Virus record (IMG/VR): IMGVR_UViG_3300035182_002586
Span: 1-64,000 of that record
Direction: 5' to 3' (one strand)
DNA: 64,000 nucleotides
In this document: positions 4,531 to 57,452 of the stretch, in pieces
Position numbering within the stretch: the stretch's first letter is position 1
Layout of the letters: each line of letters starts with the position of its first letter
Made by a program: the position numbers and the translations under genes
The notes under the pieces: generated by a model
The model's database searches: none
Told to the model about the DNA's origin: nothing
Seen by the model: only the letters and a program-made list of their open reading frames with translations

Positions 4531-4645
4531 GTCTACCGCCTTTCCACGGATGCTCCCGAGGGAGCTGCCCTTAGATACACCGGCCGGAGGGCTCGGTAGG
4601 ATCAACAGGCGTGGGAAGGCAAGAGACAGAACCCTCAGAACGGAA

Positions 4646-4852
4646 TCACTCGCTCTTGGGGCTCTTCTGGCAGTAGACTACCTGGGGTTCGCCCCCACTT
4701 CGCTGGAGGACACACCAGCCGAAGGTTAAGTCATAGGCGAGAGCACGGGAAGGGTCCTCTGCGGCCAAAGCGCGAACGTCCTCGGGGGCATGACCCCAAT
4801 CGGACGGAGGCAGGATCCGCTTTTCGATCTGGCGGGCGTCAGGTTGATTCAT
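4646..4852 (-). CDS. hypothetical protein
   Basis: ATG preceded by AGTGTA motif variant at 12 nt. Confidence 0.55.
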   Translation of the reverse strand: MNQPDARQIEKRILPPSDWGHAPEDVRALAAEDPSRALAYDLTFGWCVLQRSGGEPQVVYCQKSPKSE

Positions 4853-4861
4853 GGCCCCACT

Positions 4862-5272
4862 CTACACTACTACTGCGAGGGCTGCCTTCGCCCCCACCAG
4901 CGCCACGAACTCTTTGGCGGCGTCTTCCACAGAGCCCTTGAATTTCAAGTCCTTCGAGGCTCCCGTGGACACGAACGCGTCCCCCTTGTTGACGTGAACG
5001 AACGCGAGGCTTCCGTCCGCGAGAGAAGCCGCAACCTCCCCGTCGTTGGTGATGTGCTCCAGGACGTGCTGTACGGCCTGGTCGTGCACACAGCACGGAC
5101 AGAGTACGTGCGTTTGCGCGTCCTCCGTCTCGGCCGTGGCCCACCCCTTCGGCAAGTCGACAGTGACGGTGAGCGGGGGCCCGAGGGAGAGAATCCGTAC
5201 CTGCTGCTCCGTTGCGATCGCCCGCTTCGAGCAAGCATCGCAAGACACCTGAGCCGGAATGACGATCGGCAT
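4862..5272 (-). CDS. hypothetical protein with two CxxC motifs
   Basis: CDAC and CPCC; packed in same-strand gene run. Confidence 0.6.
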   Translation of the reverse strand: MPIVIPAQVSCDACSKRAIATEQQVRILSLGPPLTVTVDLPKGWATAETEDAQTHVLCPCCVHDQAVQHVLEHITNDGEVAASLADGSLAFVHVNKGDAFVSTGASKDLKFKGSVEDAAKEFVALVGAKAALAVVV

Positions 5273-5283
5273 GACGGACCCCC

Positions 5284-5835
5284 TCAACGGTACTTACACG
5301 GCGCCCCTTCCATCCGGCACGCGCAGTTCGGCGGACACGGACGGTTCACACACGACCCTTTCACACGGCAGAAACAGTTCGGCGGGCACGGACAGGTCAT
5401 GGGGACCTCGTTTGCGTGCTCGCAGTACATCGCGTTGATCTCCTCTTCCCCCTCGTCCACCACAGGGGGCCCGGACCCGAGAGGGCGCGGTCCCGTCTCC
5501 GGTGTGCCGTCGACGAGGGTGTCCCACACCATGGCGGGGACCTTGAACGTGTGGAAGAGCGCCATGAGGCACGTCTCGCACATCGAGAAGCGGTAGGCCG
5601 TGAGGTGCTGGAGGATCTTGGACCCGTAACCGCCCTTCACTGTGAGGTTGACGATCCCCTCGGGGTAGCCGGCGCCTGCGGGGATGAGGTCCCCGCCGCA
5701 GGCATTGCACGGAGGGAGAGGCGGAGGCACTTCCTTGAGGCGCCGCGCTTGCAGATCCTTGAGGAGCCCCACCAGGGTCTCGTTCCCTGCCTGCTGAGCG
5801 TGCTCGATCTGCTGCTTCAGGGGGTCGTGCGCCAT
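5284..5835 (-). CDS. Cys-rich hypothetical protein
   Basis: CNAC, CETC and duplicated CPPNCxCR tail; start set by GGTGTA motif. Confidence 0.65.
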   Translation of the reverse strand: MAHDPLKQQIEHAQQAGNETLVGLLKDLQARRLKEVPPPLPPCNACGGDLIPAGAGYPEGIVNLTVKGGYGSKILQHLTAYRFSMCETCLMALFHTFKVPAMVWDTLVDGTPETGPRPLGSGPPVVDEGEEEINAMYCEHANEVPMTCPCPPNCFCRVKGSCVNRPCPPNCACRMEGAPCKYR

Positions 5836-5855
5836 GGCCGGGTCCGTACACCAGA

Positions 5856-6287
5856 TCACTCGGTGTCGGTATCCCCGTCCTGATAGAGCTGATCCCGCAG
5901 GACATCTACGCGGGCCGCGCGCTGTGAAACGCGGGCGCTCTGCGCTGCAAGACTGGAAGCCCGCATTCGGACGCCGTACACGTCACGCTTCCGGGCACTC
6001 TCGACCACACCCCACGCCTGGTCGAGCGCAGCGAGGGCGTCGTCCAGAGCCGCTGCCAGCTCGTCATCGATCCGGGAGATGATCTTGGCCCTCGGTACGG
6101 AGTCGGCCGGGCCGTACGGCTTGGCGCCCTCGGGCAGGTCGGGAAGACGCGCGGCGTCCGAAGTCTCGATCGTACTGGCCAGCGCTTCGATGTCCTTGGT
6201 GCTTCGGAGGAGCTGAACCAGGGTCACCCTCTGGTAGTCCCCGAGGTGAAGGTCGTCGACGCTGACGGGTTCGGTGGAGGGCTTCAT
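5856..6287 (-). CDS. hypothetical helical protein
   Basis: ATG 14 nt after GGTGTA motif. Confidence 0.65.
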   Translation of the reverse strand: MKPSTEPVSVDDLHLGDYQRVTLVQLLRSTKDIEALASTIETSDAARLPDLPEGAKPYGPADSVPRAKIISRIDDELAAALDDALAALDQAWGVVESARKRDVYGVRMRASSLAAQSARVSQRAARVDVLRDQLYQDGDTDTE

Positions 6288-6299
6288 GGGACGCCACGG

Positions 6300-6312
6300 T
6301 ACACCAGGTGTA
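6300..6312. promoter_or_regulatory. back-to-back GGTGTA motifs (divergent leaderless promoters)
   Basis: TACACCAGGTGTA between divergent starts 6287(-) and 6323(+). Confidence 0.65.
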
Positions 6313-6322
6313 CTAGAGCGTC

Positions 6323-6553
6323 ATGCGCTGGTTCGGGAAGTCGTGGGGCGCTCCGGCATGTAGCCCCGAAGAACACGAAAGCACTCCCGTGGGTCAGTCC
6401 TGTATGTTCTGCCCCACACCGATCGCAGAAGGGGACAGGGGGCTGATCATGCCCTTCGTGAAGGCCACCACGGAGCGGAAAGAAGCCTGCGTGCACATCC
6501 GCTGCTTCCTTCGGAACGTTGGGCACTCCAGGCAATACAACCCGGCGAACTAG
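6323..6553 (+). CDS. small Zn-binding-like protein
   Basis: CMFC...HIRC; ATG 12 nt after GGTGTA. Confidence 0.6.
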   Translation: MRWFGKSWGAPACSPEEHESTPVGQSCMFCPTPIAEGDRGLIMPFVKATTERKEACVHIRCFLRNVGHSRQYNPAN

Positions 6554-6858
6554 CCCTCGTCACCCGCGAAGCCGCTGATCTGCTCCCATCCGGAGCCGCC
6601 GTGCGACGACGAGCTACCCGGACCGTAGTAACGGTCATGGTTCGAGGACGTGAAGCCGCGAACGCGCTTCGTCACCGGCCGCTCTTCCATGATCAGCCCG
6701 TACTCGCGGAGCCCACGGATCACCGGCGTCGGACACGAGAGCTTGAGCGCTTCCGCAAGCTCCTCAGCCTCGTGAAACGTGAAGGTCACGCGGTCGTCTT
6801 CGACGAGGTACTCCGCGAAGGCATCGATCGACGCAAGCTCGGGGGCGGGGGCGTCCAT
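6550..6858 (-). CDS. hypothetical protein
   Basis: Protein-like composition from MDAPAPEL; CGTTGTA motif variant upstream. Confidence 0.6.
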   Translation of the reverse strand: MDAPAPELASIDAFAEYLVEDDRVTFTFHEAEELAEALKLSCPTPVIRGLREYGLIMEERPVTKRVRGFTSSNHDRYYGPGSSSSHGGSGWEQISGFAGDEG

Positions 6859-6892
6859 GCCCCCACTACAACGGGACGCCCCGGTCGATCCA

Positions 6893-8086
6893 TCACCCGA
6901 TGGGGCAATGCCCCACGAAACGGACGTTGAGCCCTTCTGGAGCGTGGACCTTCGCCACGAGCTTCTTGAGGGTCTCGACCAGGGCCTTGGCCGCACTCAG
7001 GGTCACCCACGTCGATCCACTCACGAGCGAGAAGCTACGGCCGTGCACTGCGTACTCGGCCGCCCGGTCTTCGGTGGTCGGCCAGTGCTTGCCGAAGCAA
7101 GTGGCCGTTTGCATGAACTCCGCAGCCACGTCAGCGGAGACCTTGACGGCCTCCCCGAGAACCGGCGGAACATCGAAGGTCGGTTCCTTACGTGCCCCGG
7201 TCTTGGACGGGAGCGTGAAGGGATCGAAGTCGAAACGAGCGGAGAACTGCGTCAAGTACGTCCCGTTCCGAGCTTCCGGGGCCACAGACAGAACGAACAC
7301 GAGCGAGTGCTTGAGAACCCTCGGTTCATCGACCCCGGTGTCCGGCTCCGTCGGGAAGAGGTAGGCCATCTGCTTGACCATCGAGGCCCGTTGCTTGCGG
7401 TAGTGGGCCTTCTGGTGCTCGTTGCCCCCTTCCGCTGCCAGCACGGTGTCGATCCGGGCCAGGGTGCCTTCCCACCGCTCTTTCGGGTAGTCCGTCGTCT
7501 CGGGGAGCCACCCCGTGTCTCCGCAGCCGTACACACAGTCGTTGCCGATCCCCGACCAGTGCCCCTTGTGCTCGGGACAGGGCCGCGTGCGGAGCTTCTC
7601 CCCGCTGTAGATCAGACGCGCGAGGAGGTTCGACTTGCTGATGTCGCGCAGCACATGGTCGAGAGCGTCCGCGTAGTCGGACCCCTGCTTGTTGTCGTCG
7701 TGCCCCCGGTAGACGTCGAGGAGGTAGCCAGGCTGATTCAGAGTCTTGATGCACTGCGCCCACGTGCGGATCGCGTCGCAGTAGCGGTTGATGGGCGAGA
7801 CGGGGGTGTTGTAGTGCCGCGAGAGGCGCTTGAGCATCGCCTCGGCCTCTTCGCGAGACAGGGGCTCGGGCTCCCCCTCACGCTTCGGTCGCTGGATCCC
7901 GAGGGTGCGCGCGGCGTCGAGAAGAGCCGCGTCCAGCGTGTCCCCGTGTCCAGTCAGAACCTCCGCGTCGCCGCGGGAAAAGGTGATCTTCACGCCTCCC
8001 CACACCTCGACCTTCATGGTGGGGTAGCCGCCCGTGTGCCCCGCCCTGTCGAGCAACGTGCTCGCGATCTGCGTGAAGAGGTCCAT
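6893..8086 (-). CDS. hypothetical protein
   Basis: 397-aa ORF, ATG 12 nt after GGTGTA; internal Cys/His cluster (CPEH...C...C). Confidence 0.7.
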   Translation of the reverse strand: MDLFTQIASTLLDRAGHTGGYPTMKVEVWGGVKITFSRGDAEVLTGHGDTLDAALLDAARTLGIQRPKREGEPEPLSREEAEAMLKRLSRHYNTPVSPINRYCDAIRTWAQCIKTLNQPGYLLDVYRGHDDNKQGSDYADALDHVLRDISKSNLLARLIYSGEKLRTRPCPEHKGHWSGIGNDCVYGCGDTGWLPETTDYPKERWEGTLARIDTVLAAEGGNEHQKAHYRKQRASMVKQMAYLFPTEPDTGVDEPRVLKHSLVFVLSVAPEARNGTYLTQFSARFDFDPFTLPSKTGARKEPTFDVPPVLGEAVKVSADVAAEFMQTATCFGKHWPTTEDRAAEYAVHGRSFSLVSGSTWVTLSAAKALVETLKKLVAKVHAPEGLNVRFVGHCPIG

Positions 8087-8104
8087 GCAGACCCCCTACA
8101 CCGG

Positions 8105-8434
8105 TCAGAGCGCGGGCTCCTCAGCCAAGTGGTCCCACGCGGTCTTCTGCGGCTCTTCGATCGTGGCTCGCCACCAGATCCGAGTCATCTCCGGTTCGAT
8201 GCCGTCGAGATCGAGGTTGTCCCCCTCGTCCGCGCTGAGCACGAACACGTCGGTGCCCACGGGGAAGGTGGAGATCGGAGCGATGTCATCGGGGTCGAGG
8301 TCCATCGTGATGAGACCCCCCTGCCCCTCATCGCACATCTTGTAGATACTCGCGGGGACCACTTCGGTCTCGGGGCCGAGGGTCGTCGGGCGGGTGTCGT
8401 TCGGGATGGAGCAAGCGTAGCGGACAACGGCCAT
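8105..8434 (-). CDS. hypothetical protein with C-terminal TAWDHLAEE tag
   Basis: Acidic 109-aa ORF carrying the shared C-terminal motif. Confidence 0.65.
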   Translation of the reverse strand: MAVVRYACSIPNDTRPTTLGPETEVVPASIYKMCDEGQGGLITMDLDPDDIAPISTFPVGTDVFVLSADEGDNLDLDGIEPEMTRIWWRATIEEPQKTAWDHLAEEPAL

Positions 8435-8477
8435 ACCCCCACTACATTGCGAGGGCTTTGATGATCCATCCTAAGAT

Positions 8478-8855
8478 ATGCCGCTTCGGGACTACGGGAG
8501 CGAGTACGCACGTGCCTGTGTGGTGTGGGCCGATGGTCGCGTAGGCGTCGGACCCTGGCGTGAGCCCCTCGACGCGAAAGCCGAGGTCGCCGTCCTGGCT
8601 CGCTCACCTCGAATCCGGCACGTGTGGCTGGAGAGCGAGTCGGACCTGGCAGCCGGTCAAGCCCGTGCCGAGCTGGAAGAAGACGGGTACGTGTCGGCCA
8701 AGGGCTTTCGGGGCCTCGTGCGGATCAGCACGAACCTCCGCTCTGAGGTGGATCTGCCGGACGACGTGTTCTCCCTGCAAGAAGAGCCCGAGTGGGACGA
8801 CGAGCACACGTGGGAGGAAGTCACCGACGACGGGATCGAACGCCCGGAGGAGTGA
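8478..8855 (+). CDS. hypothetical acidic protein
   Basis: 125-aa ORF divergent from 8434. Confidence 0.6.
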   Translation: MPLRDYGSEYARACVVWADGRVGVGPWREPLDAKAEVAVLARSPRIRHVWLESESDLAAGQARAELEEDGYVSAKGFRGLVRISTNLRSEVDLPDDVFSLQEEPEWDDEHTWEEVTDDGIERPEE

Positions 8856-8875
8856 CTTGGTGTAGAAGCCCCGAC

Positions 8876-9295
8876 GTGGCGTTCAACACCTTGTGGCCGC
8901 AACCGGAGCCGGAACCTCCGCCTACCTTGTGGGCGCTGGTCCTCGAAGACCCTTTCGGCCCCCCACCGCCCCCGCTACCACCCCCACCCCCAGACCCTCG
9001 TTTCGGCGTGGCCGGCATCCGTGACCCCGACGCCCCCTGCCACATGTTCGACGACTCAGGATGGGGCCCGAAAAACGGGGACTGTGATACGGACGGACAC
9101 TACCTCTGCGATGAATGCTCCCACATGTCGTTGCGGACGTACCGAGAGCGCCACGAGAAGTGCACCCTCTGCGGGATCCCCCTGGTCTGTGCCCCCTGGA
9201 GTCGTGAGCCGAGCATGTGCCCCTTCTGCGATGAAGAGTGGCTCGCGAAAGAGAGTGCCCGTCACCAGCAGGCCCGTCTGAAGGTGGTCCGATGA
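8876..9295 (+). CDS. Pro-rich, Cys-rich hypothetical protein
   Basis: GTG 13 nt after GGTGTA; CDTDGHYLCDEC, CTLC, CPFC. Confidence 0.6.
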   Translation: MAFNTLWPQPEPEPPPTLWALVLEDPFGPPPPPLPPPPPDPRFGVAGIRDPDAPCHMFDDSGWGPKNGDCDTDGHYLCDECSHMSLRTYRERHEKCTLCGIPLVCAPWSREPSMCPFCDEEWLAKESARHQQARLKVVR

Positions 9296-9603
9296 CGCCC
9301 TACATCCCGCCTGACGGTCAGACCACGATCCACGACAACAACGTGACGCAGACCTGCACCATCTCCCTCACAGCTACGGCCGCGACGACGAACCCCATCG
9401 TTCTCACGTACCCTGCGGACCCCATCGACCCTCCGTGGCCCCGCAACCGTAGCGACCGCCTCATCTTGAAGTCCCTCAAGGAAGCGGGCATCGTGGCCGC
9501 CGTCCGCCGGGCGGAATCTCTCTTCGGTCCCCGGAAGCTGGCTTCCGACCCCTCCGCCTGGAACGCCCGGTTCTGGTCGATGTTGCAGCGCCGTCGCCCC
9601 TGA
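9292..9603 (+). CDS. hypothetical protein
   Basis: ATGA overlap with previous gene. Confidence 0.5.
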   Translation: MTPYIPPDGQTTIHDNNVTQTCTISLTATAATTNPIVLTYPADPIDPPWPRNRSDRLILKSLKEAGIVAAVRRAESLFGPRKLASDPSAWNARFWSMLQRRRP

Positions 9604-9771
9604 CACAGAATCTAGGGGTCGAAGTAGAGCCGCCCCAGCGGTCCACCCGTAAGGCTCCGGCGTCCAAGAGCGAACAACCCAGTAGCAGCACCGGACAACA
9701 CGTGGGGCCCCGTCTTGCCGGAGAGCGCGGGGCCTTCGACGCTAGCCCTTCTATCGAAATCCTCCTGGTGC

Positions 9772-10671
9772 ATGGCCCCCGGAATGGTTCTTCGAGTTGC
9801 TGCCCGGTTCCAGGTTGAAAACCAGGAGGGGCGGGTACGGCTTGCAGCTAAGTACAAGGGCAAGACAGTTTCCGAAGAAGGGAACGTCATCTACCAGTAC
9901 AGTGAACGGCAGATCGCACTCCGCAACAAGGCGAAGGCCGAGAAAATCGAGGGCCTGAAAAGGCACATCGGTGACCTTCGGGCGACCGTCAAGAAAGATC
10001 TCCGCTCGGAAGATCCCGAGACGATGTTGACAGCACTCGCGGTGGCCTTGATGGACCACACGTTCGAGAGAGTCGGCAACGAGGAGTCAGCCAAGGACGG
10101 GCACGTTGGAGTGACTGGCTGGGCAAAAAAGCACATCAGCTTCGGCAAAAAAGTCACCGTCAGGTACGTCGGAAAGTCCGGCGTGAAGCACACAAAAGAG
10201 ATTACAGACGCGGGCCTAAAGAAGGCGCTCCGTGACGCCTATGAAGCGGTCGATGGGGACAACGAAAGCATCTTCTCGTGGGACGGCGGAAAGGTAACGG
10301 CCGAGAAGGTCAACGCCTACTTGGAGGAGTTTGGCATCACTGCGAAGGACATCCGAGGCTTCCACGCGAATGACACGATGCACGAGGCCCTACGAGCTGC
10401 ACGCAAAGCAGGCGGAAAGCTCCCCGAGGACAAGAAAGCTAGGGAGAAGCAACTCAAGGAGGAGTTCAAGAAAGCTCTCGAAGAGACGGCGGATGTCGTC
10501 GGCCACGAGCCTGCGACCCTCCGTTCACAGTACTTGGTCCCGGGGCTAGAGTCGGACTACCTACGGGACGGTACGATAACGGACTCTTTCATCAAGTCCT
10601 CTTCCAGTCTTGCAGCACGCGTCGTCGACCGTTATCTTAGGGTGCATGAAGTGGGTGATCTACGTCCTTGA
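9772..10671 (+). CDS. DNA topoisomerase IB (bacterial/viral type catalytic core)
   Basis: RVGNE, GKSG, KDIR, GHEPATLRSQY match the R-K-R-H/N-Y catalytic pentad of type IB enzymes. Confidence 0.85.
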   Translation: MAPGMVLRVAARFQVENQEGRVRLAAKYKGKTVSEEGNVIYQYSERQIALRNKAKAEKIEGLKRHIGDLRATVKKDLRSEDPETMLTALAVALMDHTFERVGNEESAKDGHVGVTGWAKKHISFGKKVTVRYVGKSGVKHTKEITDAGLKKALRDAYEAVDGDNESIFSWDGGKVTAEKVNAYLEEFGITAKDIRGFHANDTMHEALRAARKAGGKLPEDKKAREKQLKEEFKKALEETADVVGHEPATLRSQYLVPGLESDYLRDGTITDSFIKSSSSLAARVVDRYLRVHEVGDLRP

Positions 10672-11376
10672 GGATCCGCGTCCGGTACGTAGGAGTGACC
10701 CACCAAGAACCTAAGAAGCGGCTTCTCAATCATCTATCCCGAGCCCGAAAGGGTGCTCGTTACCATCTGTTCAACTGGATCCGAAAACTGCTAACGGAAG
10801 GCGTCGAGCCTACTTTGCGGGTAATCGAAACCGGGTCTGGGGACGGGTGGGGCGAGGCCGAGGCCAAGTGGATTACACGGCACCGCCTTCAAGGGTGTGC
10901 CCTCACGAACGCTACGGATGGAGGTGAGGGTTGCCCCGGGCATACGGTATCCGACGAAGCTCGCGCAAAGATCCGTGCTGCTCGTTTGGGGAAGCCTCTG
11001 ACAGAAGAACACAAGGCGAAGGTGGCTGCTGGTAACCGAGGGAAGAAGATGTCCCCGGAATCCATCGCTAGGGGCGTCGATAAGCGACGGGGGCTCAAGC
11101 ACACACCAGAAGCTAAAGCGAAGATCTCCGCCTCACGTAAAGGGGGGGAAAGGGTGGAAGCCTACCCCCGAGCAACTCGCTCAACGGGCCGAAGCTATCA
11201 AGACAGCCCTGGCGGCGAAACGTGCCTCCGGTTGGGTCAGACCCCCTGTGAGCAAGGAAGCGTGCGAAAAGATCAGTGCCTCTAAGAAAGGGTGGAAGCC
11301 TACCCCCGAGGCAAGAGCACGGATGTCTGCCGCGAGGCGACAACGGGACGCTTCACGCAAGACCGACCCGGTGTAG
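10646..11376 (+). pseudogene. GIY-YIG homing endonuclease with NUMOD3 repeats, two +1 frameshifts
   Basis: MKWVIYVLEDPR (10646) continues as VRYVGVT in the +1 frame; NATDGGEG; HTPEAKAKISASRKG repeats; second shift at G7 run 11142-11148; third frame ends TAG 11376. Confidence 0.75.
11149..11310 (+). repeat. 24-bp direct repeat AAAGGGTGGAAGCCTACCCCCGAG (2 copies)
   Basis: Copies at 11149-11172 and 11287-11310; both encode KGWKPTPE in the restored endonuclease frame. Confidence 0.8.
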
Positions 11377-11385
11377 ATGAGGGGG

Positions 11386-11961
11386 ATGCCCACCCCCCTC
11401 CAGATCGCCCCCAAGACCACCCTTCTCGTCACCGGTCGAGTCGGCGTGGGCAAGTCGCAGTTCCTCTACCACCTCGCGATCGACCATTCCCAGCGAGGGC
11501 AGAGGGTTCAGCTCTGGTCTCGTGACCTGGACCCCAACCGCCTCTCGGCACGTCTGCGATCGCACGGGGCAGGGCACGTGGAGGTCATCTCGGACCCCAT
11601 CACCGAGTCCCTGGCGGACGTCGCAATCAGGAAAGGGGTGGACCTCCTCTTGATCGACGACATCCACGAGATTCTCATGTCTGCGGACCCCTACGACCAA
11701 CCCGTAGGGTCGGGTGCCGCGGGGACCAAGATCATCGTCGACACAGCACGCGCCAAGGGTCTGCCTCTCGTTGCCACGATGGCACGGAGAGGCCCGAAGG
11801 ACGGGAAGGACCCAAACGTGGACGCGGGGGTCGGAGGGCTCTTCGACGAGTACTGGTGGTTCCGCACGACGCTGAACGTCGAGTGTCTGCGGGGCGCAGA
11901 TACGACACGGGCCTTCTACGTCGAACCCCTCGTCGACCGTCCTGTCCTGCACCACATCTGA
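11386..11961 (+). CDS. P-loop NTPase (RecA/DnaB-C-like fold)
   Basis: Walker A GRVGVGKS; Walker B LLLIDD. Confidence 0.7.
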   Translation: MPTPLQIAPKTTLLVTGRVGVGKSQFLYHLAIDHSQRGQRVQLWSRDLDPNRLSARLRSHGAGHVEVISDPITESLADVAIRKGVDLLLIDDIHEILMSADPYDQPVGSGAAGTKIIVDTARAKGLPLVATMARRGPKDGKDPNVDAGVGGLFDEYWWFRTTLNVECLRGADTTRAFYVEPLVDRPVLHHI

Positions 11962-12001
11962 GAAGTCCCCGGTGAGCCCCCAACTCACCGGGGATCCAGA
12001 C

Positions 12002-13237
12002 CTACTGCGCGGCTGCGGCCGCGGGCTTCCCAGAGAGCTGCCGCTCGATGTCGTTGAGAGCATCCGCGATCGAGGCCACGCCCGCTTTGTCCGCCGCCGC
12101 GAAGGGGGTGTTCGTGGCCTTGCAGGCGGCCTGCACGTCATACCACGCATTGTGACTCGTGAGCCCCTCTAGGAAGACGATGGCTCCGATGCGCCCCGCG
12201 CGGACGCGCTTCACCACACCCTTGATGTCCTTCGACGAGCCATTGTCGATCGAGAACCACCCCGGCTCGATACCGAAGCGCTCTTTCACCAGCTCGATCT
12301 TCTCCTCCCGGCGAAGCCCACCGACGAGGTAGAGCCCTGCGTCCTCGATGCGCTTCCGGAGGTTGGGCAGCTCCGGCCAGTCGTACGTCACCGGGCTCTC
12401 GGCGCGTTCCTTCTCCTTGGCTGGACGAGAGACGCGCGGTCCAGCCGGGGCTTGCGCGGCATCCCGGTCGAAGCGTTGGAGCCGGCGACGGGCATCCTGT
12501 GCAAGGAGGTGCCAGTTGTCGCGGAACGTCGGCGAAAGCCCCTTGATGAACCCGATCTCTTCCGGTAGCCCGCGCACGAACCCGTCGATGCGCTGCATGA
12601 GGCGTTCGAGCCGCCGATGGACCGGGTGGTCCATCTCGATGTGCCCCATGATCTGTCGCGCCTCGGCCACGATCGCCTGGAGCATGGGCTGGAGACGCAA
12701 CGCGTGATCTTCGGCGTCGGCCTTCTCGAACTCGGCGAGAAGGGCCTCCGCCTTGGCGATCTCTGCGCGCGTTGGAACATGACGGACGATCACTTCCCGA
12801 ACGGTGTCCGCGTCGTTCGAGGGCACGGCTCGCAGAGCGGACTCACTCAGCTCCGCGGGTCGGGGTACGGCTCGCAGGATCACCGGAACTGCGGGAGCCT
12901 CTTGGGGAACCGGTTCCGGGACCACTGGCGCGTCCTGTGGGGGCTCGTCGGCAACAGCAGGGGCTTCCTCCGGTAGGTCTCCCAACAGGCTGAGGAGCGC
13001 CCGGAGAGAGCTGCGGAGGTGCAACGCCGAGGGGTCGTCCTCGGGCGGAGGTAGCGGGTCGTGACCAAGCACCGAGAACACTTCGGTATGCACGTCGTGC
13101 TCGGCCTTACGGCGAGCGTGGGTGAGGTACGGATCGAGCCATCGGCGGACATCCTCGACAGCACCCGCCACGGGGGTGGTCCGAATCTCCACGCGTTTTC
13201 GAACCGCCTCCAGCAGCTTCTCGTTCAAGCCTTCCAT
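12002..13237 (-). CDS. hypothetical protein with C-terminal DUF2325-like domain
   Basis: C-terminal LTSHNAWYDVQAACKATNTPF...GVASIADAL pattern; GAGAGG RBS before ATG 13237. Confidence 0.6.
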   Translation of the reverse strand: MEGLNEKLLEAVRKRVEIRTTPVAGAVEDVRRWLDPYLTHARRKAEHDVHTEVFSVLGHDPLPPPEDDPSALHLRSSLRALLSLLGDLPEEAPAVADEPPQDAPVVPEPVPQEAPAVPVILRAVPRPAELSESALRAVPSNDADTVREVIVRHVPTRAEIAKAEALLAEFEKADAEDHALRLQPMLQAIVAEARQIMGHIEMDHPVHRRLERLMQRIDGFVRGLPEEIGFIKGLSPTFRDNWHLLAQDARRRLQRFDRDAAQAPAGPRVSRPAKEKERAESPVTYDWPELPNLRKRIEDAGLYLVGGLRREEKIELVKERFGIEPGWFSIDNGSSKDIKGVVKRVRAGRIGAIVFLEGLTSHNAWYDVQAACKATNTPFAAADKAGVASIADALNDIERQLSGKPAAAAAQ

Positions 13238-13329
13238 GGCGCCTCTCATAGGTGGGTCCCCGCGCCCCCTGTGGATGCGGCCACGTGATTCTGTGTACAC
13301 CGGGGCGAGCTGGTGTACCCTCACCCACG

Positions 13330-13890
13330 ATGCTCACGAAGAACGCTGTCAAGGCTGTCCGCGCGTACGAGAAGGCAACCCCAGATCGGGATGTCGCCCG
13401 TGCCCGAGTCACCGAAGGACACGTGACGCCTGGCCCCTACCTGGCCCTACCTCTCATCGGATGGCTCGCGCAGGTGGGAGGAGCACGCTTCCTCAGCCTC
13501 GGAATGGCGCTCATCCGCATCTCGGACAACTCGCCCGTCGGAAGTCTCGGGTGGGCCATCCCGTTCGGACCGAGAACGGACGAGACCTGTGCAAACGTCC
13601 TCGCAGCTCTCGGGTGGGACGGCCGCATCTGGCCCACGAACCCCGGCTGGCCGACGGGCACCGACCGAGAGGAGGCGATCCGCACGATGCTCGACGAGGC
13701 CAACCTCGGCAACGCGATCGTCTTCCCTCCGGATGAGACGCGTGGCGCCCCGGCCGTGCGCATCAATGTCCTTGCGAGTTCGGGCCCCTTCACCCTGGAC
13801 CCGTCTTGCGTGGGGGCTGCCAACGTCCCGGAGAGCTGGAAGCAGCGCCTTTGGGCGCTCGTCTCCGACCCCGCTTGGTTCCAGCGCTAG
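13330..13890 (+). CDS. hypothetical protein
   Basis: ATG 14 nt after GGTGTA. Confidence 0.65.
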   Translation: MLTKNAVKAVRAYEKATPDRDVARARVTEGHVTPGPYLALPLIGWLAQVGGARFLSLGMALIRISDNSPVGSLGWAIPFGPRTDETCANVLAALGWDGRIWPTNPGWPTGTDREEAIRTMLDEANLGNAIVFPPDETRGAPAVRINVLASSGPFTLDPSCVGAANVPESWKQRLWALVSDPAWFQR

Positions 13891-14423: not shown

Positions 14424-14488
14424 ATGTCGATGCTACAACGCCAGAACCGCCCTCGCCAGAGGTTGCACTAGGTGTACCCTTCAAGCAG

Positions 14489-16565: not shown

Positions 16566-16613
16566 AGCGGGCCGGTACACCGGGTCACCCCCTTGGGGCT
16601 CGGGGCACTTTCG

Positions 16614-17849: not shown

Positions 17850-17871
17850 GGCGGCGACGCGTACACCGATT

Positions 17872-18561: not shown

Positions 18562-18580
18562 GAAGCTCGGGTACACCGAA

Positions 18581-18931: not shown

Positions 18932-18951
18932 GCGCGACTACTACACCAAGG

Positions 18952-19125: not shown

Positions 19126-19164
19126 GCCGCCGACGCTACATGGCGCCGGAGGAGCGGGCCAAAT

Positions 19165-20313: not shown

Positions 20314-20383
20314 CTGCGGGCACCCCCAAACATGCGCGGTCAACCGACTGTGTGCGCCTTCGTTCGGTTACACGTACACCGGA

Positions 20384-21768: not shown

Positions 21769-21779
21769 CCCGCTCTCCC

Positions 21780-21968
21780 CTACACCGGGTTCAGCGGTGG
21801 AGTGTTCTTGCGTGCTGCCTCACGGCGACGGGCCAGAGCCTCCAGGATGCGCCCGAACAAGTTCTGAGGGATCCCGGCGCGGCGAACCATGTCGACGCGC
21901 TCTCTTGTCTGTGCTTCGGCGTCCGCGCCGTCAGCTTGCGCCCACCACGGGGTTTCCTCGGTTTTCAC
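21780..21968 (-). CDS. small hypothetical protein
   Basis: GTG 12 nt after GGTGTA. Confidence 0.5.
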   Translation of the reverse strand: MKTEETPWWAQADGADAEAQTRERVDMVRRAGIPQNLFGRILEALARRREAARKNTPPLNPV

Positions 21969-22040
21969 AGACAAGTTCTACACCGGCAGGGCCACCCGCC
22001 CGGGTCCGATCCTTCTTGTACGGGGGTATAGTCCGCCCCC

Positions 22041-35331: not shown

Positions 35332-37573
35332 TGTCAACTTGACAACGTACACCGCCCGCAGCCGCCACGACCGCCGCCTGTGCCTCAGCGATGGCACGCG
35401 CAAGCATCGTATTTCTCTGCACCACCATGTCATTCGCGATGGCACGACCCACCGCATCGGCGTGCCCGATCAGCCAGAGCTTCTTCTTGGCCCGGGTCAC
35501 GGCCGTGTAGAGGAGGTTCCGCTGGAGCATGCGACGCTGCGTACGGGCGATGGGGAGGATGACCGTTTCCCACTCCGACCCCTGGCTCTTGTGCACCGTG
35601 ACGGCGTAGGCGAGGCACAGCTTGTAGGGCGCCTCGCTCTTCGGGACACGGACGTAGGTGTCCACATCCATCGGCCCGATCCCGTGGATCTTGATCACCA
35701 CGTCTTCACGGGAGAATGAGTTCACCTTCGCCATGTCCCCGTTGTAGATCCCGAGCTGGTAGTCGTTCTTGACCACCATCACACGATCGCCCTCTCGAAG
35801 AGAGAAGTCGCCCGCCGCCCACTCCGGCTGACCCACGGCAGGGTTCAGCTTGTCCCGCATCTGCGTGTTGAGGGCGTCCACTCCGACCGACCCCTCATAC
35901 TTGGGCGAGAGCACTTGGAAGTTGGCGTCACGGGCCTTGAGCTTCGCCGCCATCTCGACGATCAGGTGGGCTGCCTTCTCCTCGTTCTCCAGGGGGATGA
36001 AGCGGAACTCGCTTGTAGGATCCTTCTCGTCGAGGTCGAGGCTCTCTCCTCCGTTGATCCGGTGGGAGTTCGTGACGATGCCGCCCTTGGCGGATTGACG
36101 GAAGATCTGCGTCAGTCGGACGTTCGGGATCGCCGGACACGCGAGAAGCTCACGCAGCACGTTACCGGGCCCAACCGATGGGAGCTGCGCGTCGTCCCCC
36201 ACGAACACGAGGATCGTCGAGGGGTGTAGAGCGTCGAGGATGCGGAAGAACAGCTCGATGTCGACCATCGACATCTCGTCGATGATCACGGCGTCGATCG
36301 TGTACTTGTTCGCCCGGTTGAAGGCCCACGTCTCCCCGTCGTACCCGAAGGTGCGGTGGATGGTCGCAGACTCTTTGCCCGTGACGCTGGCCATCCTCTT
36401 GGCTGCGATGCCCGTCGGGGCCATCTGCCGAAAGCTCAGCCCCGCAGCCTGAAAGAGGTTCACGAAGGTCTTCACCACCGTGGTCTTGCCCGTGCCCGGG
36501 AGCCCCGTGAGGACCAACACCCGGCTCGTCAGCAGCTTCTCTACGGCCTCTTTCTGCGCGTTCGACAGGTCGATGCGGTGAGACCTCTCGTACTCATCGA
36601 GGAACGCGAGGGGTTCGACTTCGAGCTGCACGGGGGTCAGGAACTCGGCCAGCATGGTGGCCGCTTCTCGTTCGTAGCGGAAGTACTCGGGGAGGTAGAC
36701 GGCTTCCCCATCCACCACAACAGCGCCCTCCGCCGCCAAGCCTTCGACGGCCGTGTTGACCCGTGAGGGTCTCGTGGGGAACGCCGACACCCGGGCATCC
36801 CGAGCCACATCCGGGAACAGCATGGGGAAGTCCCCCTGCTTCACGAATACGTGACCTTCCGTAGTGGCGGCACGCAAGGTGGCGAGAACCGCCCCCTGCG
36901 TACGGCGAGGGTCTTCAAGGTCGAGACCCATGCGCGCAGCGATACGATCAGCTTGCTGCATGGAGAACCCACGGATCTCCAGGAGCCGGTATGGGTTCTT
37001 GGACACGATGTCCTTCGCATCATGCCCAAACCGCACGAACACGTCCTTGATCACCTGCGCGGTGAGCCCCTGGTCCTGGAGGACACCCAACAGCTCGTAC
37101 GTCGTCCGGAGCCGGTCCCACGCGACCAGTGCACGGCTCATCGAGCTGTGCTTGATCTGCCCCGGCATCGCGAGGTGGTCTGGTTCGGCCAACGCCAGAA
37201 CGGCCTTAGGGTTTTCGGCCAGAGCTGCGAACGTCCCCTCCTCGAAGTGATCGCAGATCGTCCGCGTCAGGTTGTAGTCGAGGAAGCCGTCCACACACTC
37301 GTGAAGGAAGCGCAGAGCGCTTTCCCCGTCGGGAGCCCACGGCGCCCAACAGTGGATTGCGAACTGCCTCCCGTACTTCGGGTGCATGACCCACTCCCCA
37401 TTGAGCTGGAGAGTGATGCCCCCGGAGACCCCAAGGAGCCCGCTCAGGTGGCCTCGTGCCTTGCAGAGCACTTCGGACACAGGAGGGTTCGCTGACGCAA
37501 CCTGTAGGGACAGGATGTAGAAGTCCTTGCTCGCGTGCACCACACTGTGTACGCGAGCGCGAATCGTAGCCAT
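35288..37573 (-). CDS. recD2: RecD2/TraA-family SF1B helicase
   Basis: HPKYGRQF, NPYRL, GLPGTGKTT, APTG.AA, DEMSM, GD..QLPSVG, YAVTVHKSQGSE, LYTAVTRAK. Confidence 0.93.
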   Translation of the reverse strand: MATIRARVHSVVHASKDFYILSLQVASANPPVSEVLCKARGHLSGLLGVSGGITLQLNGEWVMHPKYGRQFAIHCWAPWAPDGESALRFLHECVDGFLDYNLTRTICDHFEEGTFAALAENPKAVLALAEPDHLAMPGQIKHSSMSRALVAWDRLRTTYELLGVLQDQGLTAQVIKDVFVRFGHDAKDIVSKNPYRLLEIRGFSMQQADRIAARMGLDLEDPRRTQGAVLATLRAATTEGHVFVKQGDFPMLFPDVARDARVSAFPTRPSRVNTAVEGLAAEGAVVVDGEAVYLPEYFRYEREAATMLAEFLTPVQLEVEPLAFLDEYERSHRIDLSNAQKEAVEKLLTSRVLVLTGLPGTGKTTVVKTFVNLFQAAGLSFRQMAPTGIAAKRMASVTGKESATIHRTFGYDGETWAFNRANKYTIDAVIIDEMSMVDIELFFRILDALHPSTILVFVGDDAQLPSVGPGNVLRELLACPAIPNVRLTQIFRQSAKGGIVTNSHRINGGESLDLDEKDPTSEFRFIPLENEEKAAHLIVEMAAKLKARDANFQVLSPKYEGSVGVDALNTQMRDKLNPAVGQPEWAAGDFSLREGDRVMVVKNDYQLGIYNGDMAKVNSFSREDVVIKIHGIGPMDVDTYVRVPKSEAPYKLCLAYAVTVHKSQGSEWETVILPIARTQRRMLQRNLLYTAVTRAKKKLWLIGHADAVGRAIANDMVVQRNTMLARAIAEAQAAVVAAAGGVRCQVDNERTSDTGVPANAG

Positions 37574-40028: not shown

Positions 40029-40066
40029 GGGGGACGCCCGTACACCACGTGTTAGACTTCGGCGCG

Positions 40067-41831: not shown

Positions 41832-41837
41832 ACAACG

Positions 41838-42957: not shown

Positions 42958-43002
42958 GGGTGCGCCCGTACACCAGGCACACCCATGTTCGGCCCTTCTA
43001 GA

Positions 43003-50719: not shown

Positions 50720-50763
50720 GAACAGCATATACACCAGATCTACGACCCTCAGGACGAGAAACC

Positions 50764-54551: not shown

Positions 54552-54554
54552 GGC

Positions 54555-55877: not shown

Positions 55878-55898
55878 GGGGGATCTTACACCGGGGGT

Positions 55899-56495
55899 TC
55901 AGGCAGCAGCGTAAGGCTTGGGGTCGTACTTGCACAGGAGCATGGGCGTGCTTTCGAGCCCCTGCGGAAAGTGCTGCAACACCCTCTGTTGATAGTCGTT
56001 CGGCTCCCACTCGGGGTTGGCCGCCTTGTACTTGAGCAGAAACTCCGCCTCGTATGCACGAGCCCGGATCTGCACCTTGCCAGGGGGACTGATGCGCCCG
56101 TTCCAGTAGTCCACGGCCTGGCTGCCGAGGAAGATGAGCGCCCCCGTCTGCATGACAGGATCCTCCTCGATTCTCCTGACCCACTCGACGGGCAAGAGAA
56201 TCAGGGCCCGGGTTGCGTCCCCCGCCCGCACGACGGTGAAAGAAGGGGTTGCCACGGGGCCGAGAGCCGACTCGACAACCCGGTGCTTCACCAGGTCCCA
56301 CACGATCGACATGAGACGGCGGATGTTCGGGTCGGGGAACTGCGACCGGAGGAGGTGCACGGACGCCGTGAAGAGGCTTTCCACAGTCTTCACGTTGGCA
56401 TACTCCGCAGAATCGTGCGGCATTTCCTCGACGTTTTTCGACTGGCGGAGGATCTCCGCGAACCGTTCCGCCCAGCTCGGTGCGCCCGTAGTCAT
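55899..56495 (-). CDS. hypothetical protein
   Basis: ATG 13 nt after GGTGTA. Confidence 0.7.
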   Translation of the reverse strand: MTTGAPSWAERFAEILRQSKNVEEMPHDSAEYANVKTVESLFTASVHLLRSQFPDPNIRRLMSIVWDLVKHRVVESALGPVATPSFTVVRAGDATRALILLPVEWVRRIEEDPVMQTGALIFLGSQAVDYWNGRISPPGKVQIRARAYEAEFLLKYKAANPEWEPNDYQQRVLQHFPQGLESTPMLLCKYDPKPYAAA

Positions 56496-56502
56496 CGATC
56501 TA

Positions 56503-56512
56503 GGTGTACACC
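56503..56512. promoter_or_regulatory. palindromic GGTGTACACC bidirectional motif
   Basis: Perfect 10-bp palindrome; each half lies 13 nt from a divergent ATG (56495 and 56520). Confidence 0.7.
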
Positions 56513-56519
56513 GGGGAGC

Positions 56520-56857
56520 ATGACGGCCCCCGTCTGCTCGACGAACCTCTCTTGGTCGCGTCAGGTCAGGGGATCCAAAGGCGACCTCTACAACGTGACG
56601 TTCGGGGAGAGGTACGACAGCACCGTCGGGTGGTCCTGTACCTGCCCCGACTACCGGCTCCGCCGCCAAGCCAAGGGTGAGGTCTGCAAGCACATCCGGG
56701 TCGCGAGTAGCTGGCGGTGCTGCTGGAACGCCGAGCTGGACCCTACCAGAACCCTACCAGAACCGTCCCCGCAGACGGGCTCTGCCCTCTTTGTCGGGCG
56801 AAGATCGTGTGGGCCGAAGCGCTACCTGATCAATTTCGTTCTATCACAGGTGGGTGA
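56520..56857 (+). pseudogene. SWIM Zn-finger protein, frameshifted by an 11-bp duplication
   Basis: CTCPDY...CKHI; removing one ACCCTACCAGA copy restores a CPLC-containing C-terminus ending at TGA 56857. Confidence 0.65.
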
Positions 56858-56858
56858 T

Positions 56859-57254
56859 ATGGATCCGAGCCACCCCGCCTGGAAGGCCAAGTCCGCCTCG
56901 ATGTTCGACGACTCGCTCTGGATCGCCATCCAGAACGCCTTCCACGGATGGGCCGACCACGTGTTTCTCCCCATCCTCTCGAAAGACCTCAAGGGAGCGT
57001 GGAGTATCGACAGTAGCCATCCGGCGGCGCTGAACCAGATGCAGGTCTCCTGCGCCCTGTCAGCGGCGGACGGGTCGAAGCTCAACGTCTACCTCGGCCT
57101 CGACGGGTCGCTGCACATCAGCATCTTCGCCGCGTACTACGCCCCCGGCGCGCGTGACGTGACCGAGCGATACAAGGGCAAGATCGACTCGTTCTCGGGG
57201 TCGCACGCGGCATCCAGTGTTGCCCACGAGATGAACGCCGCGTTCAAGATCTAG
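56859..57254 (+). CDS. hypothetical protein
   Basis: ATG with AGGTGGG RBS; TTCTATC motif upstream. Confidence 0.65.
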   Translation: MDPSHPAWKAKSASMFDDSLWIAIQNAFHGWADHVFLPILSKDLKGAWSIDSSHPAALNQMQVSCALSAADGSKLNVYLGLDGSLHISIFAAYYAPGARDVTERYKGKIDSFSGSHAASSVAHEMNAAFKI

Positions 57255-57430
57255 TTCTTCGCGTCTCCAGCACACAAGACAGCACAGAGGTCCTCGATCA
57301 TTTCGAGGACCTCTGCGTCTTTCGTGGCGTCCAAAGGCGGAGGAAGACGGCCGACGTACTTCGGCTCCCCTTGGATGTAGATCGTCCCACCGGGGAGCTT
57401 GGTCACCGTGTGCTTGCTCTTGACGCTCAC
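57251..57430 (-). CDS. 59-aa hypothetical protein (not in ORF track)
   Basis: MSVKSKHTVTKLPGGTIYIQGEPKYVG...; GTG 12 nt after GGTGTA. Confidence 0.55.
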   Translation of the reverse strand: MSVKSKHTVTKLPGGTIYIQGEPKYVGRLPPPLDATKDAEVLEMIEDLCAVLCAGDAKN

Positions 57431-57452
57431 GGTGAACCCCTACACCGGACGG

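What the first reader, a model, noticed from the sequence alone, without database searches (positions are those of the whole stretch)
4576..57446. Genome-wide GGTGTA motif fixed 11-14 nt before start codons: a leaderless transcription/translation programme
Seen: exact GGTGTA whose TA begins 11-14 nt before the start codon at 22 genes: 5835, 6287, 6323, 8086, 8876, 11386, 13330, 14489, 16565, 17849, 18561, 18931, 21768, 21968, 35337, 40028, 42957, 50719, 55877, 56495, 56520, 57430. Variants occur at 4852, 6858, 8434, 14423, 19125 and 23127. Most of these starts lack a Shine-Dalgarno, and no conserved -35 is visible. The motif often reuses the upstream GTG-TAG stop. It is not seen before genes of the head module (57453-64000). 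Known: a -10 element starting near -12 puts the transcription start on the start codon. Inference: a phage sigma factor or RNAP recognises one short element and makes near-monocistronic leaderless mRNAs for early/middle genes, possibly escaping host translation shut-off.
Basis: partly seen in the sequence, partly recalled or inferred. Interest (0 to 1): 0.82.

Follow-up and report, generated by a model that had tools for sequence, protein, structure and literature searches.

The report
Leaderless-gene promoter motif of huge phage
An invariant 7-base signal (YGGTGTA) sits about 10 bases before the start codon of roughly a fifth of the genes of an uncultured phage of more than 0.5 Mb and of its two known relatives. 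It is most likely a phage-specific promoter that makes messenger RNAs beginning at the start codon: a known kind of gene architecture, here with a new sequence, unusual strictness and large scale.

Summary
All 22 listed sites check out, and one more start (21016) was found. In the window, 24 of 37 GGTGTA copies lie 9-13 nt before a start codon, against 9% for permuted hexamers. In the whole 529-kb record, 113-166 of 332 copies do. Two relatives (407 and 363 kb, 55-57% TerL identity) carry the same signal: Y-GGTGTA, most often 10 nt before ATG, with no -35 and no Shine-Dalgarno.

I read it as a -10-type, -35-independent promoter that places the transcript start at or within a few bases of the start codon. 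Five findings support this:
- The geometry fits: C at -1, 88% ATG starts.
- Back-to-back copies sit in divergent gaps of 35-50 nt.
- Copies lie 13-19 nt before tRNA and tmRNA genes, which have no start codon.
- A second, bipartite class shares the GTA core and has a -35-like box at sigma-70 spacing.
- In the relatives, that second class also drives leadered genes with a Shine-Dalgarno.

No phage RNA polymerase was found. A conserved, very divergent candidate sigma factor co-occurs with the motif.

The motif is not genome-wide (about 18-25% of genes). Transcripts are probably nested rather than monocistronic. No RNA data exist, so 5' ends are unproven. Verdict: a new variant of a known kind.

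The parts
5847..5852 (-). class-1 motif GGTGTA, 11 nt before ATG 5835 (183 aa, no Pfam hit)
6300..6305 (-). class-1 motif, 12 nt before ATG 6287; back to back with the + strand copy at 6307
6307..6312 (+). class-1 motif, 10 nt before ATG 6323; the divergent pair has 35 nt between its start codons
8097..8102 (-). class-1 motif, 10 nt before ATG 8086 (397 aa)
8859..8864 (+). class-1 motif, 11 nt before GTG 8876
11370..11375 (+). class-1 motif, 10 nt before ATG 11386
13312..13317 (+). class-1 motif, 12 nt before ATG 13330
14471..14476 (+). class-1 motif, 12 nt before ATG 14489
16576..16581 (-). class-1 motif, 10 nt before ATG 16565 (D12/Dam-class DNA methyltransferase)
17862..17867 (-). class-1 motif, 12 nt before GTG 17849 (N6_N4 DNA methylase)
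18572..18577 (-). class-1 motif, 10 nt before ATG 18561 (RNase HII)
18942..18947 (-). class-1 motif, 10 nt before ATG 18931 (116 aa). This gene is missing in a ~95% identical relative, and a motif copy sits at the deletion joint.
21781..21786 (-). class-1 motif, 12 nt before ATG 21768
21979..21984 (-). class-1 motif, 10 nt before GTG 21968 (62 aa frame)
35348..35353 (-). class-1 motif, 10 nt before TTG 35337 or 16 nt before ATG 35331; start uncertain
40041..40046 (-). class-1 motif, 12 nt before GTG 40028
42969..42974 (-). class-1 motif, 11 nt before ATG 42957 (DHHA1-domain protein)
50730..50735 (-). class-1 motif, 10 nt before ATG 50719 (DUF1848)
55887..55892 (-). class-1 motif, 9 nt before ATG 55877 (ClpX-like AAA ATPase)
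56503..56508 (+). class-1 motif, 11 nt before ATG 56520; overlaps its divergent partner in the palindrome GGTGTACACC
56507..56512 (-). class-1 motif, 11 nt before ATG 56495
57441..57446 (-). class-1 motif, 10 nt before GTG 57430 (59 aa)
6859..6894 (-). class-2 bipartite promoter-like site: GATGGATC, spacer, TGTAG, then 8 nt to ATG 6858.
8435..8470 (-). class-2 bipartite promoter-like site before ATG 8434.
4853..4873 (-). loose variant AGTGTAG, 9 nt before ATG 4852
19126..19145 (-). loose variant TGTAG, about 10 nt before ATG 19125, with no -35-like box

Best explanation
YGGTGTA is the single recognition element of a -35-independent, -10-type ('extended -10-like') promoter class of this phage clade.

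How it most likely works (all steps inferred unless marked):
1. The host's multisubunit RNA polymerase carries a factor that reads the invariant heptamer.
2. It opens the DNA just downstream and starts RNA about 10 nt after the A of the motif, at the A of a conserved C-ATG.
3. Each served gene is therefore the 5'-terminal cistron of a leaderless mRNA, or one with a leader of at most a few bases. It is translated without a Shine-Dalgarno sequence.
4. Leaderless translation needs a 5'-terminal AUG, so every such gene carries its own copy, even 20 nt behind the previous stop codon. With no terminators in between, the transcripts are nested and co-terminal.

The class belongs to a programme of at least two classes. 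A bipartite class shares the (T)GTA core and adds a -35-like box at sigma-70 spacing. In this phage that box is GATGGATC, with 17-18 nt to the GTA. One member of this class, with a normal leader and Shine-Dalgarno, drives the gene of a conserved, very divergent sigma-like protein (record coordinates 93299-94480). I take that protein as the most likely reader of the heptamer.

Shown: the motif, its position, its strictness and its conservation in relatives; the absence of a Shine-Dalgarno; the copies before RNA genes; and the co-occurrence with the sigma candidate.

Inferred: the transcript start, the leaderless state, and which protein reads the motif.
For: Position and strictness.

Conservation: the same motif at the same distance occurs in two relatives of different G+C. 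Counts against a reversed-pattern control are G000 132 vs 6, G001 141 vs 8, G002 54 vs 3; logos.

Geometry: with TA read as -12/-11, the spacing of 9-13 nt (mode 10) puts the start codon at positions 6-10 (mode 7) after a -10 hexamer. From my own knowledge, that is the usual start-site range for sigma-70 enzymes. C is found at -1 in 73% of sites and the start codon is ATG in 88%, against 63% for other genes.

No Shine-Dalgarno above the random rate.

Divergent junctions: 44 of 113 served genes sit at divergent junctions with a median of 49 nt between genes, each with its own copy.

Copies before genes that are not translated: 13 and 15 nt before tRNA-Thr and tRNA-Ser in G000, and 15 and 19 nt before the tmRNA and tRNA-Pro in G002. 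My arithmetic gives about 0.3 expected by chance, Poisson P about 3e-4.

The bipartite class shares the GTA core and has a -35-like box at 16-18 nt. In G001 (TTGAACT) and G002 (GGTTGATTC), some of its members have ATG at 8 nt and others a 15-30 nt leader with a Shine-Dalgarno. That is what a promoter does and a ribosome signal does not.

Regulon membership is partly conserved: 45-60% of orthologues of served genes carry the motif, against 8-13% for other genes.

Sigma candidate:
- Sub-threshold Sigma70_r2 hits fall in the same register in four homologues.
- TIGR02937 E 0.0019; phrog_1740 'sigma factor' E 1.2e-4.
- Language-model neighbours are viral sigma r2 clusters.
- ECF sigmas dominate the Foldseek list, though none is significant.
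- Its own gene has a class-2 promoter.
- All five contigs that encode a homologue have the motif at gene starts. Two complete genomes of more distant jumbo-phage relatives have neither.

Precedents: -10 motifs 6-7 bp before ORFs give leaderless mRNAs in Deinococcus-Thermus (PMC12340547). phiYS40 makes mostly leaderless middle/late mRNAs (PMC3594737).
Against: - No transcript 5' end has been seen. No public RNA run holds the phage.
- The T at -7, which sigma-70-type -10 elements need, is not conserved. The TG abuts the TA instead of lying one base away as in classical extended -10 promoters.
- The two classes differ by 2 nt in the distance from GTA to ATG (8 vs 10). One shared reading geometry therefore does not fit both exactly.
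- About 200 further copies lie inside genes. That is near the chance level, so the heptamer alone (about 13 bits) cannot fully specify a promoter.
- No protein passes a curated threshold for a sigma region 2. The structure model of the candidate is mediocre (pLDDT 62) and its fold matches are not significant.
- The co-occurrence of candidate and motif is confounded by shared ancestry.
- The host is unknown, so a host factor cannot be excluded.
Confidence: 0.72

Rival explanations
1. RNA-level processing signal. Long polycistronic transcripts are cut by a phage or host endoribonuclease at a fixed distance after GGUGUA. This gives mRNAs with a 5'-terminal AUG and frees tRNA precursors.
For: It would also explain the fixed distance to the ATG, the missing Shine-Dalgarno and the copies before tRNA and tmRNA genes. 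The strictness of the hexamer is more typical of a sequence-specific nuclease or binding protein than of sigma-70 promoters.
Against: Divergent gene pairs with only 35-50 nt between their start codons each have a copy, and no other promoter is visible anywhere. The core is shared with a class that has a -35-like box at canonical spacing. The C(-1)/A(+1) preference matches a transcription start. No candidate nuclease was identified.
Confidence: 0.08
2. Non-Shine-Dalgarno translation initiation signal. The transcribed motif recruits or positions ribosomes, by pairing with rRNA or through a phage protein, 10 nt before internal start codons of polycistronic mRNAs.
For: There is a fixed distance to the start codon and no Shine-Dalgarno. 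Tight packing behind upstream stop codons resembles translational coupling.
Against: Only GGUG could pair with the conserved 16S tail (CACC). The invariant UA could not, and the spacing (12-14 nt from GGUG to AUG) is too long for that part of the anti-Shine-Dalgarno (my own reasoning from the universal 16S 3' end). Copies stand before tRNA and tmRNA genes, which have no start codon. Related GTA sites with a -35-like box drive leadered genes that carry their own Shine-Dalgarno. No S21 or IF3 gene was found in the three phages.
Confidence: 0.06
3. The promoter element is read by the host's own primary sigma (an extended -10-type promoter), not by a phage sigma. Phage proteins that mimic or bind sigma region 4 switch the enzyme from -35/-10 promoters to this class, as gp39 of P23-45 and AsiA of T4 do.
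For: The switch from -10/-35 promoters to the extended -10 class is an established phage strategy (PMC4124052). The phages encode conserved proteins with sigma region 4 only: a 215-aa protein with two such helix-turn-helix domains, syntenic in all three, and a 117-aa region-4-only protein. The -35-like boxes of the relatives resemble TTGACA. The motif is identical in phages of 55-64% G+C.
Against: T at -7 is not conserved, although host sigma A needs it; positions 1, 2 and 6 are irreplaceable in Deinococcus (PMC12340547). The near-total intolerance to mismatches is unlike host promoters. The regulon is confined to the clade that has the sigma candidate.
Confidence: 0.2

Closest known systems
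'-10 motif adjacent to ORFs' of Deinococcus-Thermus (TANNNT 6-7 bp before the ORF, leaderless mRNA; PMC12340547)
   Same: A -10-type element lies directly before the start codon, with no -35 needed and no Shine-Dalgarno. The geometry matches if TA is read as the first two bases of the hexamer, leaving 6 nt to the ATG at the modal spacing. It serves a large share of genes.
   Different: Here the conserved part is YGGTG upstream of the TA. The sixth base (T) is free and mismatches are hardly tolerated. It is a phage regulon conserved across phages, not a host-wide feature. The host is unknown.
Thermus phage phiYS40 middle/late transcription (Sevostyanova et al. 2007, as summarised in PMC3594737)
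   Same: A large phage whose non-early mRNAs mostly lack leaders; a temporal programme with promoter classes.
   Different: phiYS40 was shown experimentally and uses host-like -10 elements (my recollection; the paper was not readable here). Here the motif is different and invariant, there are over 100 copies per genome, and a candidate phage sigma exists. Nothing is shown at the RNA level.
Extended -10 promoters and phage-induced specificity switches (P23-45 gp39, T4 AsiA; PMC4124052)
   Same: A -35-independent class that coexists with a -35/-10 class in one phage. The phage also encodes proteins related to the sigma region 4 / beta-flap interface.
   Different: The TG is directly next to the TA (TGTA, not TGnTA). 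No gp39 or AsiA homologue was looked for or found. The region-4-like proteins are a different family.
T4 late promoters (TATAAATA read by gp55 with gp33 and gp45; my own knowledge)
   Same: One short, nearly invariant -10-region element, no -35, a dedicated and very divergent phage sigma, and many copies before individual genes.
   Different: The sequence is unrelated. T4 late mRNAs have leaders with a Shine-Dalgarno. No gp55, gp33 or sliding-clamp coupling is shown here.
ECF-type sigma promoters (AAC-containing -35, about 16-17 nt, CGT-type -10; my own knowledge)
   Same: The bipartite class of relative G001 (TTGAACT, 17-18 nt, GTAC) resembles this layout. The sigma candidate's weak sequence and fold matches are to ECF sigmas.
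   Different: ECF promoters normally need the -35 box, and class 1 has none. The box in this phage is GATGGATC. None of this is significant on its own.

Membership tests
sigma-70-family -10 element (TANNNT) | T at -12 and A at -11, at 6-8 nt from the start site | tested here: met
   TA is invariant. It lies 9-13 (mode 10) nt before the A of the start codon. If transcription starts there, the start site falls at hexamer-end positions 6-10.
sigma-70-family -10 element (TANNNT) | conserved T at -7 (sixth base) | tested here: not met
   At the modal spacing the sixth base is A7 C12 G12 T11.
classical extended -10 promoter (TGnTATAAT) | TG at -15/-14, one base before the hexamer | tested here: not met
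   The TG abuts the TA (GGTGTA) in every copy. The function may be alike, but the register differs.
leaderless mRNA genes | the primary 5' end of the mRNA is at the start codon | not testable with these tools
   No public RNA run holds the phage. The one read-laying run used DNA contigs only.
leaderless mRNA genes | no Shine-Dalgarno, strong ATG preference, promoter element at -10 distance | tested here: met
   Shine-Dalgarno-like 4-mers 0.19 vs 0.17 random and 0.45 in other genes; ATG 88% vs 63%; C at -1 in 73%.
Shine-Dalgarno-type ribosome binding site | complementarity to the 16S 3' tail, 5-9 nt before the start codon | tested here: not met
   Only GGUG could pair. The TA is unexplained and the spacing is 12-14 nt. 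The motif also precedes tRNA and tmRNA genes. The host's 16S is unknown; I used the universal tail from my own knowledge.
phage single-element promoter with a dedicated phage sigma (T4-late-like) | one short invariant element and no -35 | tested here: met
phage single-element promoter with a dedicated phage sigma (T4-late-like) | a phage-encoded sigma that reads it | tested here: inconclusive
   A candidate (393 aa, record coordinates 93299-94480) is conserved in all three phages. It has only sub-threshold sigma signals and co-occurs with the motif. Binding is untested.
promoters of phage-encoded RNA polymerases (T7-like, phiKZ-like) | a phage RNA polymerase gene | tested here: not met
   PF00562: no hit, and its control rang in all 14 control genomes. 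No DFDGD motif in any long frame of the three genomes. PF00940: no hit, but its control rang nowhere, so that result is weak.

The most novel reading that the evidence does not exclude
A clade of 0.36-0.62-Mb phages expresses a fifth or more of its genes as leaderless cistrons from an invariant 7-bp promoter. This factor would itself be switched on from a bipartite promoter class. The same motif would mark the borders of gene cassettes that are gained and lost between strains.
Probability: 0.3. Interest if true: 0.75.

Novelty: new variant of a known kind. Interest (0 to 1): 0.55.

Why it matters
Huge phages are known almost only from metagenomes, and nothing is known about how they time gene expression.

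- The result gives three of these genomes a readable regulatory map of more than 100 sites each, and a two-class promoter logic.
- It corrects many start codons.
- It predicts that leaderless translation, so far documented at scale for phages only in phiYS40, is a major mode in a clade of the largest known phages.
- It names two testable protein candidates: a divergent sigma and a protein with two sigma-region-4-like domains.
- A strict 7-bp element that suffices for expression without a ribosome binding site would also be a compact expression part for high-G+C hosts.

Tried and rejected
- **Megablast of 20 kb against cultured and deposited phages:** no match.
- **RNA runs:** none holds the phage; only a rhizosphere run with a related protein was offered, which is useless for 5' ends.
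- **Read laying on DNA contigs**: the same phage is present in microbial-mat and hot-spring runs, and a ~95% identical relative in groundwater. The variant list was truncated, so selection on the motif could not be tested.
- **Host:** the one genome-contig scan, with the region-4-tandem protein, returned MAG contigs labelled Parcubacteria, Lysinibacter, Methylobacter and Lentisphaeria. These are clearly mis-binned phage pieces, so the host is unresolved. The nearest cultured TerL is from an acidobacterial jumbo phage at 29% identity, which is only a hint.
- **Canonical sigma-70 promoters and intrinsic terminators in 4000-23500:** promoters 2 vs 1.9 expected; terminator-like sites 18 vs 10.5, all weak.
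- **Sigma region 2** (PF04542, TIGR02937): nothing over threshold.
- **Ribosomal protein S21 and IF3:** absent.
- **215-aa protein:** good model (pLDDT 87), but only its region-4-like domain matches known folds.
- **Sigma candidate:** no PDB sequence match; Foldseek not significant.
- **Repeat-element artefact:** rejected, because nothing beyond one base on each side of the hexamer is conserved.
- **DNA-level roles** (methylation, packaging or recombination site): rejected as the main role, because orientation and distance are tied to the downstream gene.
- **phiYS40 paper** (PMC1885378): not held.

Full report
**What the window is.** The window is the first 64 kb of a 528,957-bp IMG/VR virus record with 64% G+C throughout. 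It is a real tailed phage. It encodes a large terminase (61177-63204, minus strand), a portal (57453-59369, minus strand), RecA, SbcCD-like proteins, a RecD2-type helicase, an NAD-dependent ligase and a ClpX-like ATPase. It also carries 54 tRNA genes and a tmRNA. Nothing similar exists among deposited phages at the DNA level. The TerL protein finds two relatives in IMG/VR: G001 (407 kb, 55% G+C) and G002 (363 kb, 63% G+C), at 55-57% identity. I fetched both whole.

**The observation.** GGTGTA occurs 37 times in the window; 10.5 are expected. Using open frames only, 24 of 37 copies have a start codon 9-13 nt downstream, against 9.3% for permuted hexamers (P about 2e-16). I made a rough gene call for the whole record from a codon-periodic Markov model (639 genes, 81% coverage). 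Of the 332 copies in the record, 108-113 lie 9-13 nt before a called start, against a median of 0.7% for permuted hexamers. Counting any frame of at least 50 codons gives 166 copies.

The logo adds a pyrimidine before the motif (C 80, T 25, G 1) and C/G after it, and nothing else. In particular there is no -35 box and no purine-rich stretch before the start codon. The spacing is 10 nt (42 sites), 11 (28), 9 (21), 12 (18) and 13 (4). The hexamer is nearly intolerant of change: one-mismatch variants are enriched at most 9-fold and mostly under 3-fold, against 45-fold for the exact word.

**It is a clade feature.** The pattern GGTGTA-N9-12-ATG occurs 132, 141 and 54 times in G000, G001 and G002. 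The reversed-pattern control gives 6, 8 and 3. The logo and the modal spacing are the same in all three. Five more distant fragments (TerL about 31%), the 485-kb uncultured phage LR745208.1 (TerL 42%) and the acidobacterial jumbo phage Tunturi_5 (TerL 29%) show no such excess.

Genes behind the motif are mostly fast-evolving. Only 11 and 20 of the 113 have a homologue in G001 and G002. Where they do, 45-60% of the homologues also carry the motif, against 8-13% for other genes. In the window the served genes include a Dam-class and an N6/N4 DNA methyltransferase, RNase HII, a ClpX-like ATPase, a DHHA1 phosphoesterase and many ORFans. Long single-strand blocks at 220-280 kb and 340-400 kb, and the head genes, lack the motif and use Shine-Dalgarno-like sequences.

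**Transcription or translation?** Six lines of evidence point to transcription.
1. The served starts have no Shine-Dalgarno: such 4-mers occur at 19% of them, 17% at random and 45% at other genes. ATG makes up 88% of the starts, against 63% elsewhere. A C precedes the start codon in 73% of cases, giving the usual pyrimidine/purine pair of a transcription start.
2. If TA is read as -12/-11, the spacings put the A of the ATG at positions 6-10 (mode 7) after the hexamer. That is the normal start-site window of sigma-70-type enzymes (my own knowledge).
3. 44 of the 113 genes sit at divergent junctions with a median of 49 nt between genes, each with its own copy. At 6300-6312 and 56503-56512 the two copies are back to back or overlapping. 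Such genes must have promoters, and nothing else is there; canonical promoters occur at the chance rate.
4. The motif precedes genes that are never translated. It lies 13 and 15 nt before the mature ends of tRNA-Thr and tRNA-Ser in G000, and 15 and 19 nt before the tmRNA and tRNA-Pro in G002. About 0.3 such cases are expected (my arithmetic).
5. A second class exists, discussed next.
6. Only GGUG of the motif could pair with the universal 16S tail, and at the wrong distance.

**The second class.** K-mer enrichment upstream of starts gave a second signal: GATGGATC, 17-18 nt, (T)GTAG-W-R-GG, then C-ATG exactly 8 nt after the GTA. There are 53-73 sites, mostly at 417-524 kb. Its core aligns with class 1 base for base (CG-y-TGTA-G against CG-G-TGTA-S).

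If TGTAGW is read as the hexamer, the box, spacer, hexamer and start codon have canonical sigma-70 geometry. The -35-like box is specific to each lineage: none of the G000 type occurs in the relatives. G002 has GGTTGATTC and G001 has TTGAACT at the same distance from a GTA. In those two phages, some members have ATG at 8 nt. Others have a leader of 15-30 nt with a clear Shine-Dalgarno. An element that works with or without a leader is a promoter, not a ribosome signal. A -35/-10 class beside a -35-independent class is the layout known from P23-45 and T4 (PMC4124052).

**Who reads it?** No phage RNA polymerase was found: PF00562 has no hit with a working control, and there is no DFDGD motif. 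PF00940 has no hit either, but its control was uninformative.

Sigma region 4 is found in several proteins.
- One is a 215-aa protein with two such helix-turn-helix domains. It lies 8-10 kb from the terminase gene and is syntenic in all three phages. It belongs to a family with about 600 cluster representatives in metagenomes. Its structure model is good (pLDDT 87), but only the region-4 domain resembles anything solved.
- Another is a 117-aa protein consisting of region 4 only.

No region 2 passes a curated threshold. However, a 393-aa protein (record coordinates 93299-94480) has orthologues in G001 and G002 and gives consistent weak signals:
- The first half of Sigma70_r2 matches in the same place in three orthologues (E 0.024, 0.0007, 0.025). 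The second half matches after a long insertion in a fourth homologue.
- TIGR02937 gives E 0.0019, and a PHROG annotated as sigma factor gives E 1.2e-4.
- Language-model neighbours are viral sigma-r2 clusters.
- The Foldseek list is headed by ECF sigmas, though none is significant and the model is mediocre.

The candidate's gene is driven by a class-2 site with a 24-nt leader. Two further short contigs that encode homologues (60% and 28% identical) also have YGGTGTA 10-12 nt before ATG starts. LR745208.1 and Tunturi_5 have neither the protein nor the regulon. I put the chance that this protein is a sigma factor at about 0.7. The main alternative is the host's primary sigma, redirected by the region-4-like proteins.

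**What I could not do.** There is no RNA evidence, so 'leaderless' rests on geometry and analogy. The analogies are the -10 motif 6-7 bp before ORFs in Deinococcus-Thermus (PMC12340547) and the leaderless middle/late mRNAs of phiYS40 (PMC3594737).

Several points do not fit neatly:
- The missing T at -7.
- The 2-nt offset between the two classes.
- The roughly 200 background copies inside genes.

The first two mean this is not a standard sigma-70 -10 element; the background copies mean the heptamer alone cannot be the whole specification. The host is unknown.

**Verdict.** Its details need correcting on four points: 'genome-wide', 'monocistronic', 'phage RNAP' and the 'variants'. The kind of system is known; the sequence, its strictness, the number of copies, the two-class layout and the candidate factor are new.

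Noticed in passing
whole record; L074:12764-21797 (contig 3300035182 Ga0373636_0000001, positions below 90622): The 'provirus' record is cut from a 620,031-bp contig. The 9 kb just outside it has the same G+C, Endonuclease VII, an RF-1-domain protein, ORFans and both promoter-like classes. The trimmed 90 kb therefore looks like phage, and the genome is probably at least 620 kb.
   Followed up: partly
G000 123254-123328 (outside the window): A tRNA with anticodon TTA would read the UAA stop codon. All 54 tRNAs and a tmRNA (tag ANDNGTVITALKAAA) lie on one strand at 123-177 kb. Among my gene calls TAA is the rarest stop (37 of 639), and TAG is frequent (211), partly because the motif's TA is reused as a TAG stop.
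   Followed up: no
window 6859-6894 and 8435-8470 (minus strand); about 50-70 more sites at 417-524 kb of the record: A second, bipartite promoter-like class: GATGGATC, 17-18 nt, TGTAG, 8 nt, ATG. It is specific to this phage. The relatives have TTGAACT or GGTTGATTC in the same place.
   Followed up: yes
window 15573-16565 (-) and 16614-17849 (-): A Dam-class (D12) and an N6/N4 DNA methyltransferase are both class-1 genes. The -35-like box of class 2 contains GATC, so methylation could switch that class. This is speculation.
   Followed up: no
window 18563-18954: In a ~95% identical relative from a groundwater run, the class-1 gene 18581-18931 is absent. The joint carries 20 other letters that contain a motif copy on the minus strand. 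Gene cassettes may be exchanged at motif borders.
   Followed up: no
G000 71524-72171 (-), L022:1171-1818: A 215-aa protein with two sigma-region-4-like helix-turn-helix domains and a conserved LPQW tail, syntenic near the terminase gene in all three phages. It belongs to a family with about 600 cluster representatives in metagenomes and has no known function.
   Followed up: partly
G000 93299-94480 (+), L073:799-1980: A 393-aa candidate sigma factor with a long insertion inside region 2, conserved in G001 and G002. It shows local similarity to the N-terminal part of the annotated sigma factor gp3 of Tunturiibacter phage Tunturi_5 (BLASTP E 7e-4 for the pair).
   Followed up: partly
runs X2, X3, X5 on window 16001-22000: Contigs with no differences from the window over the pieces laid occur in microbial-mat and hot-spring metagenomes from other studies. 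The phage is therefore widespread in such habitats.
   Followed up: no
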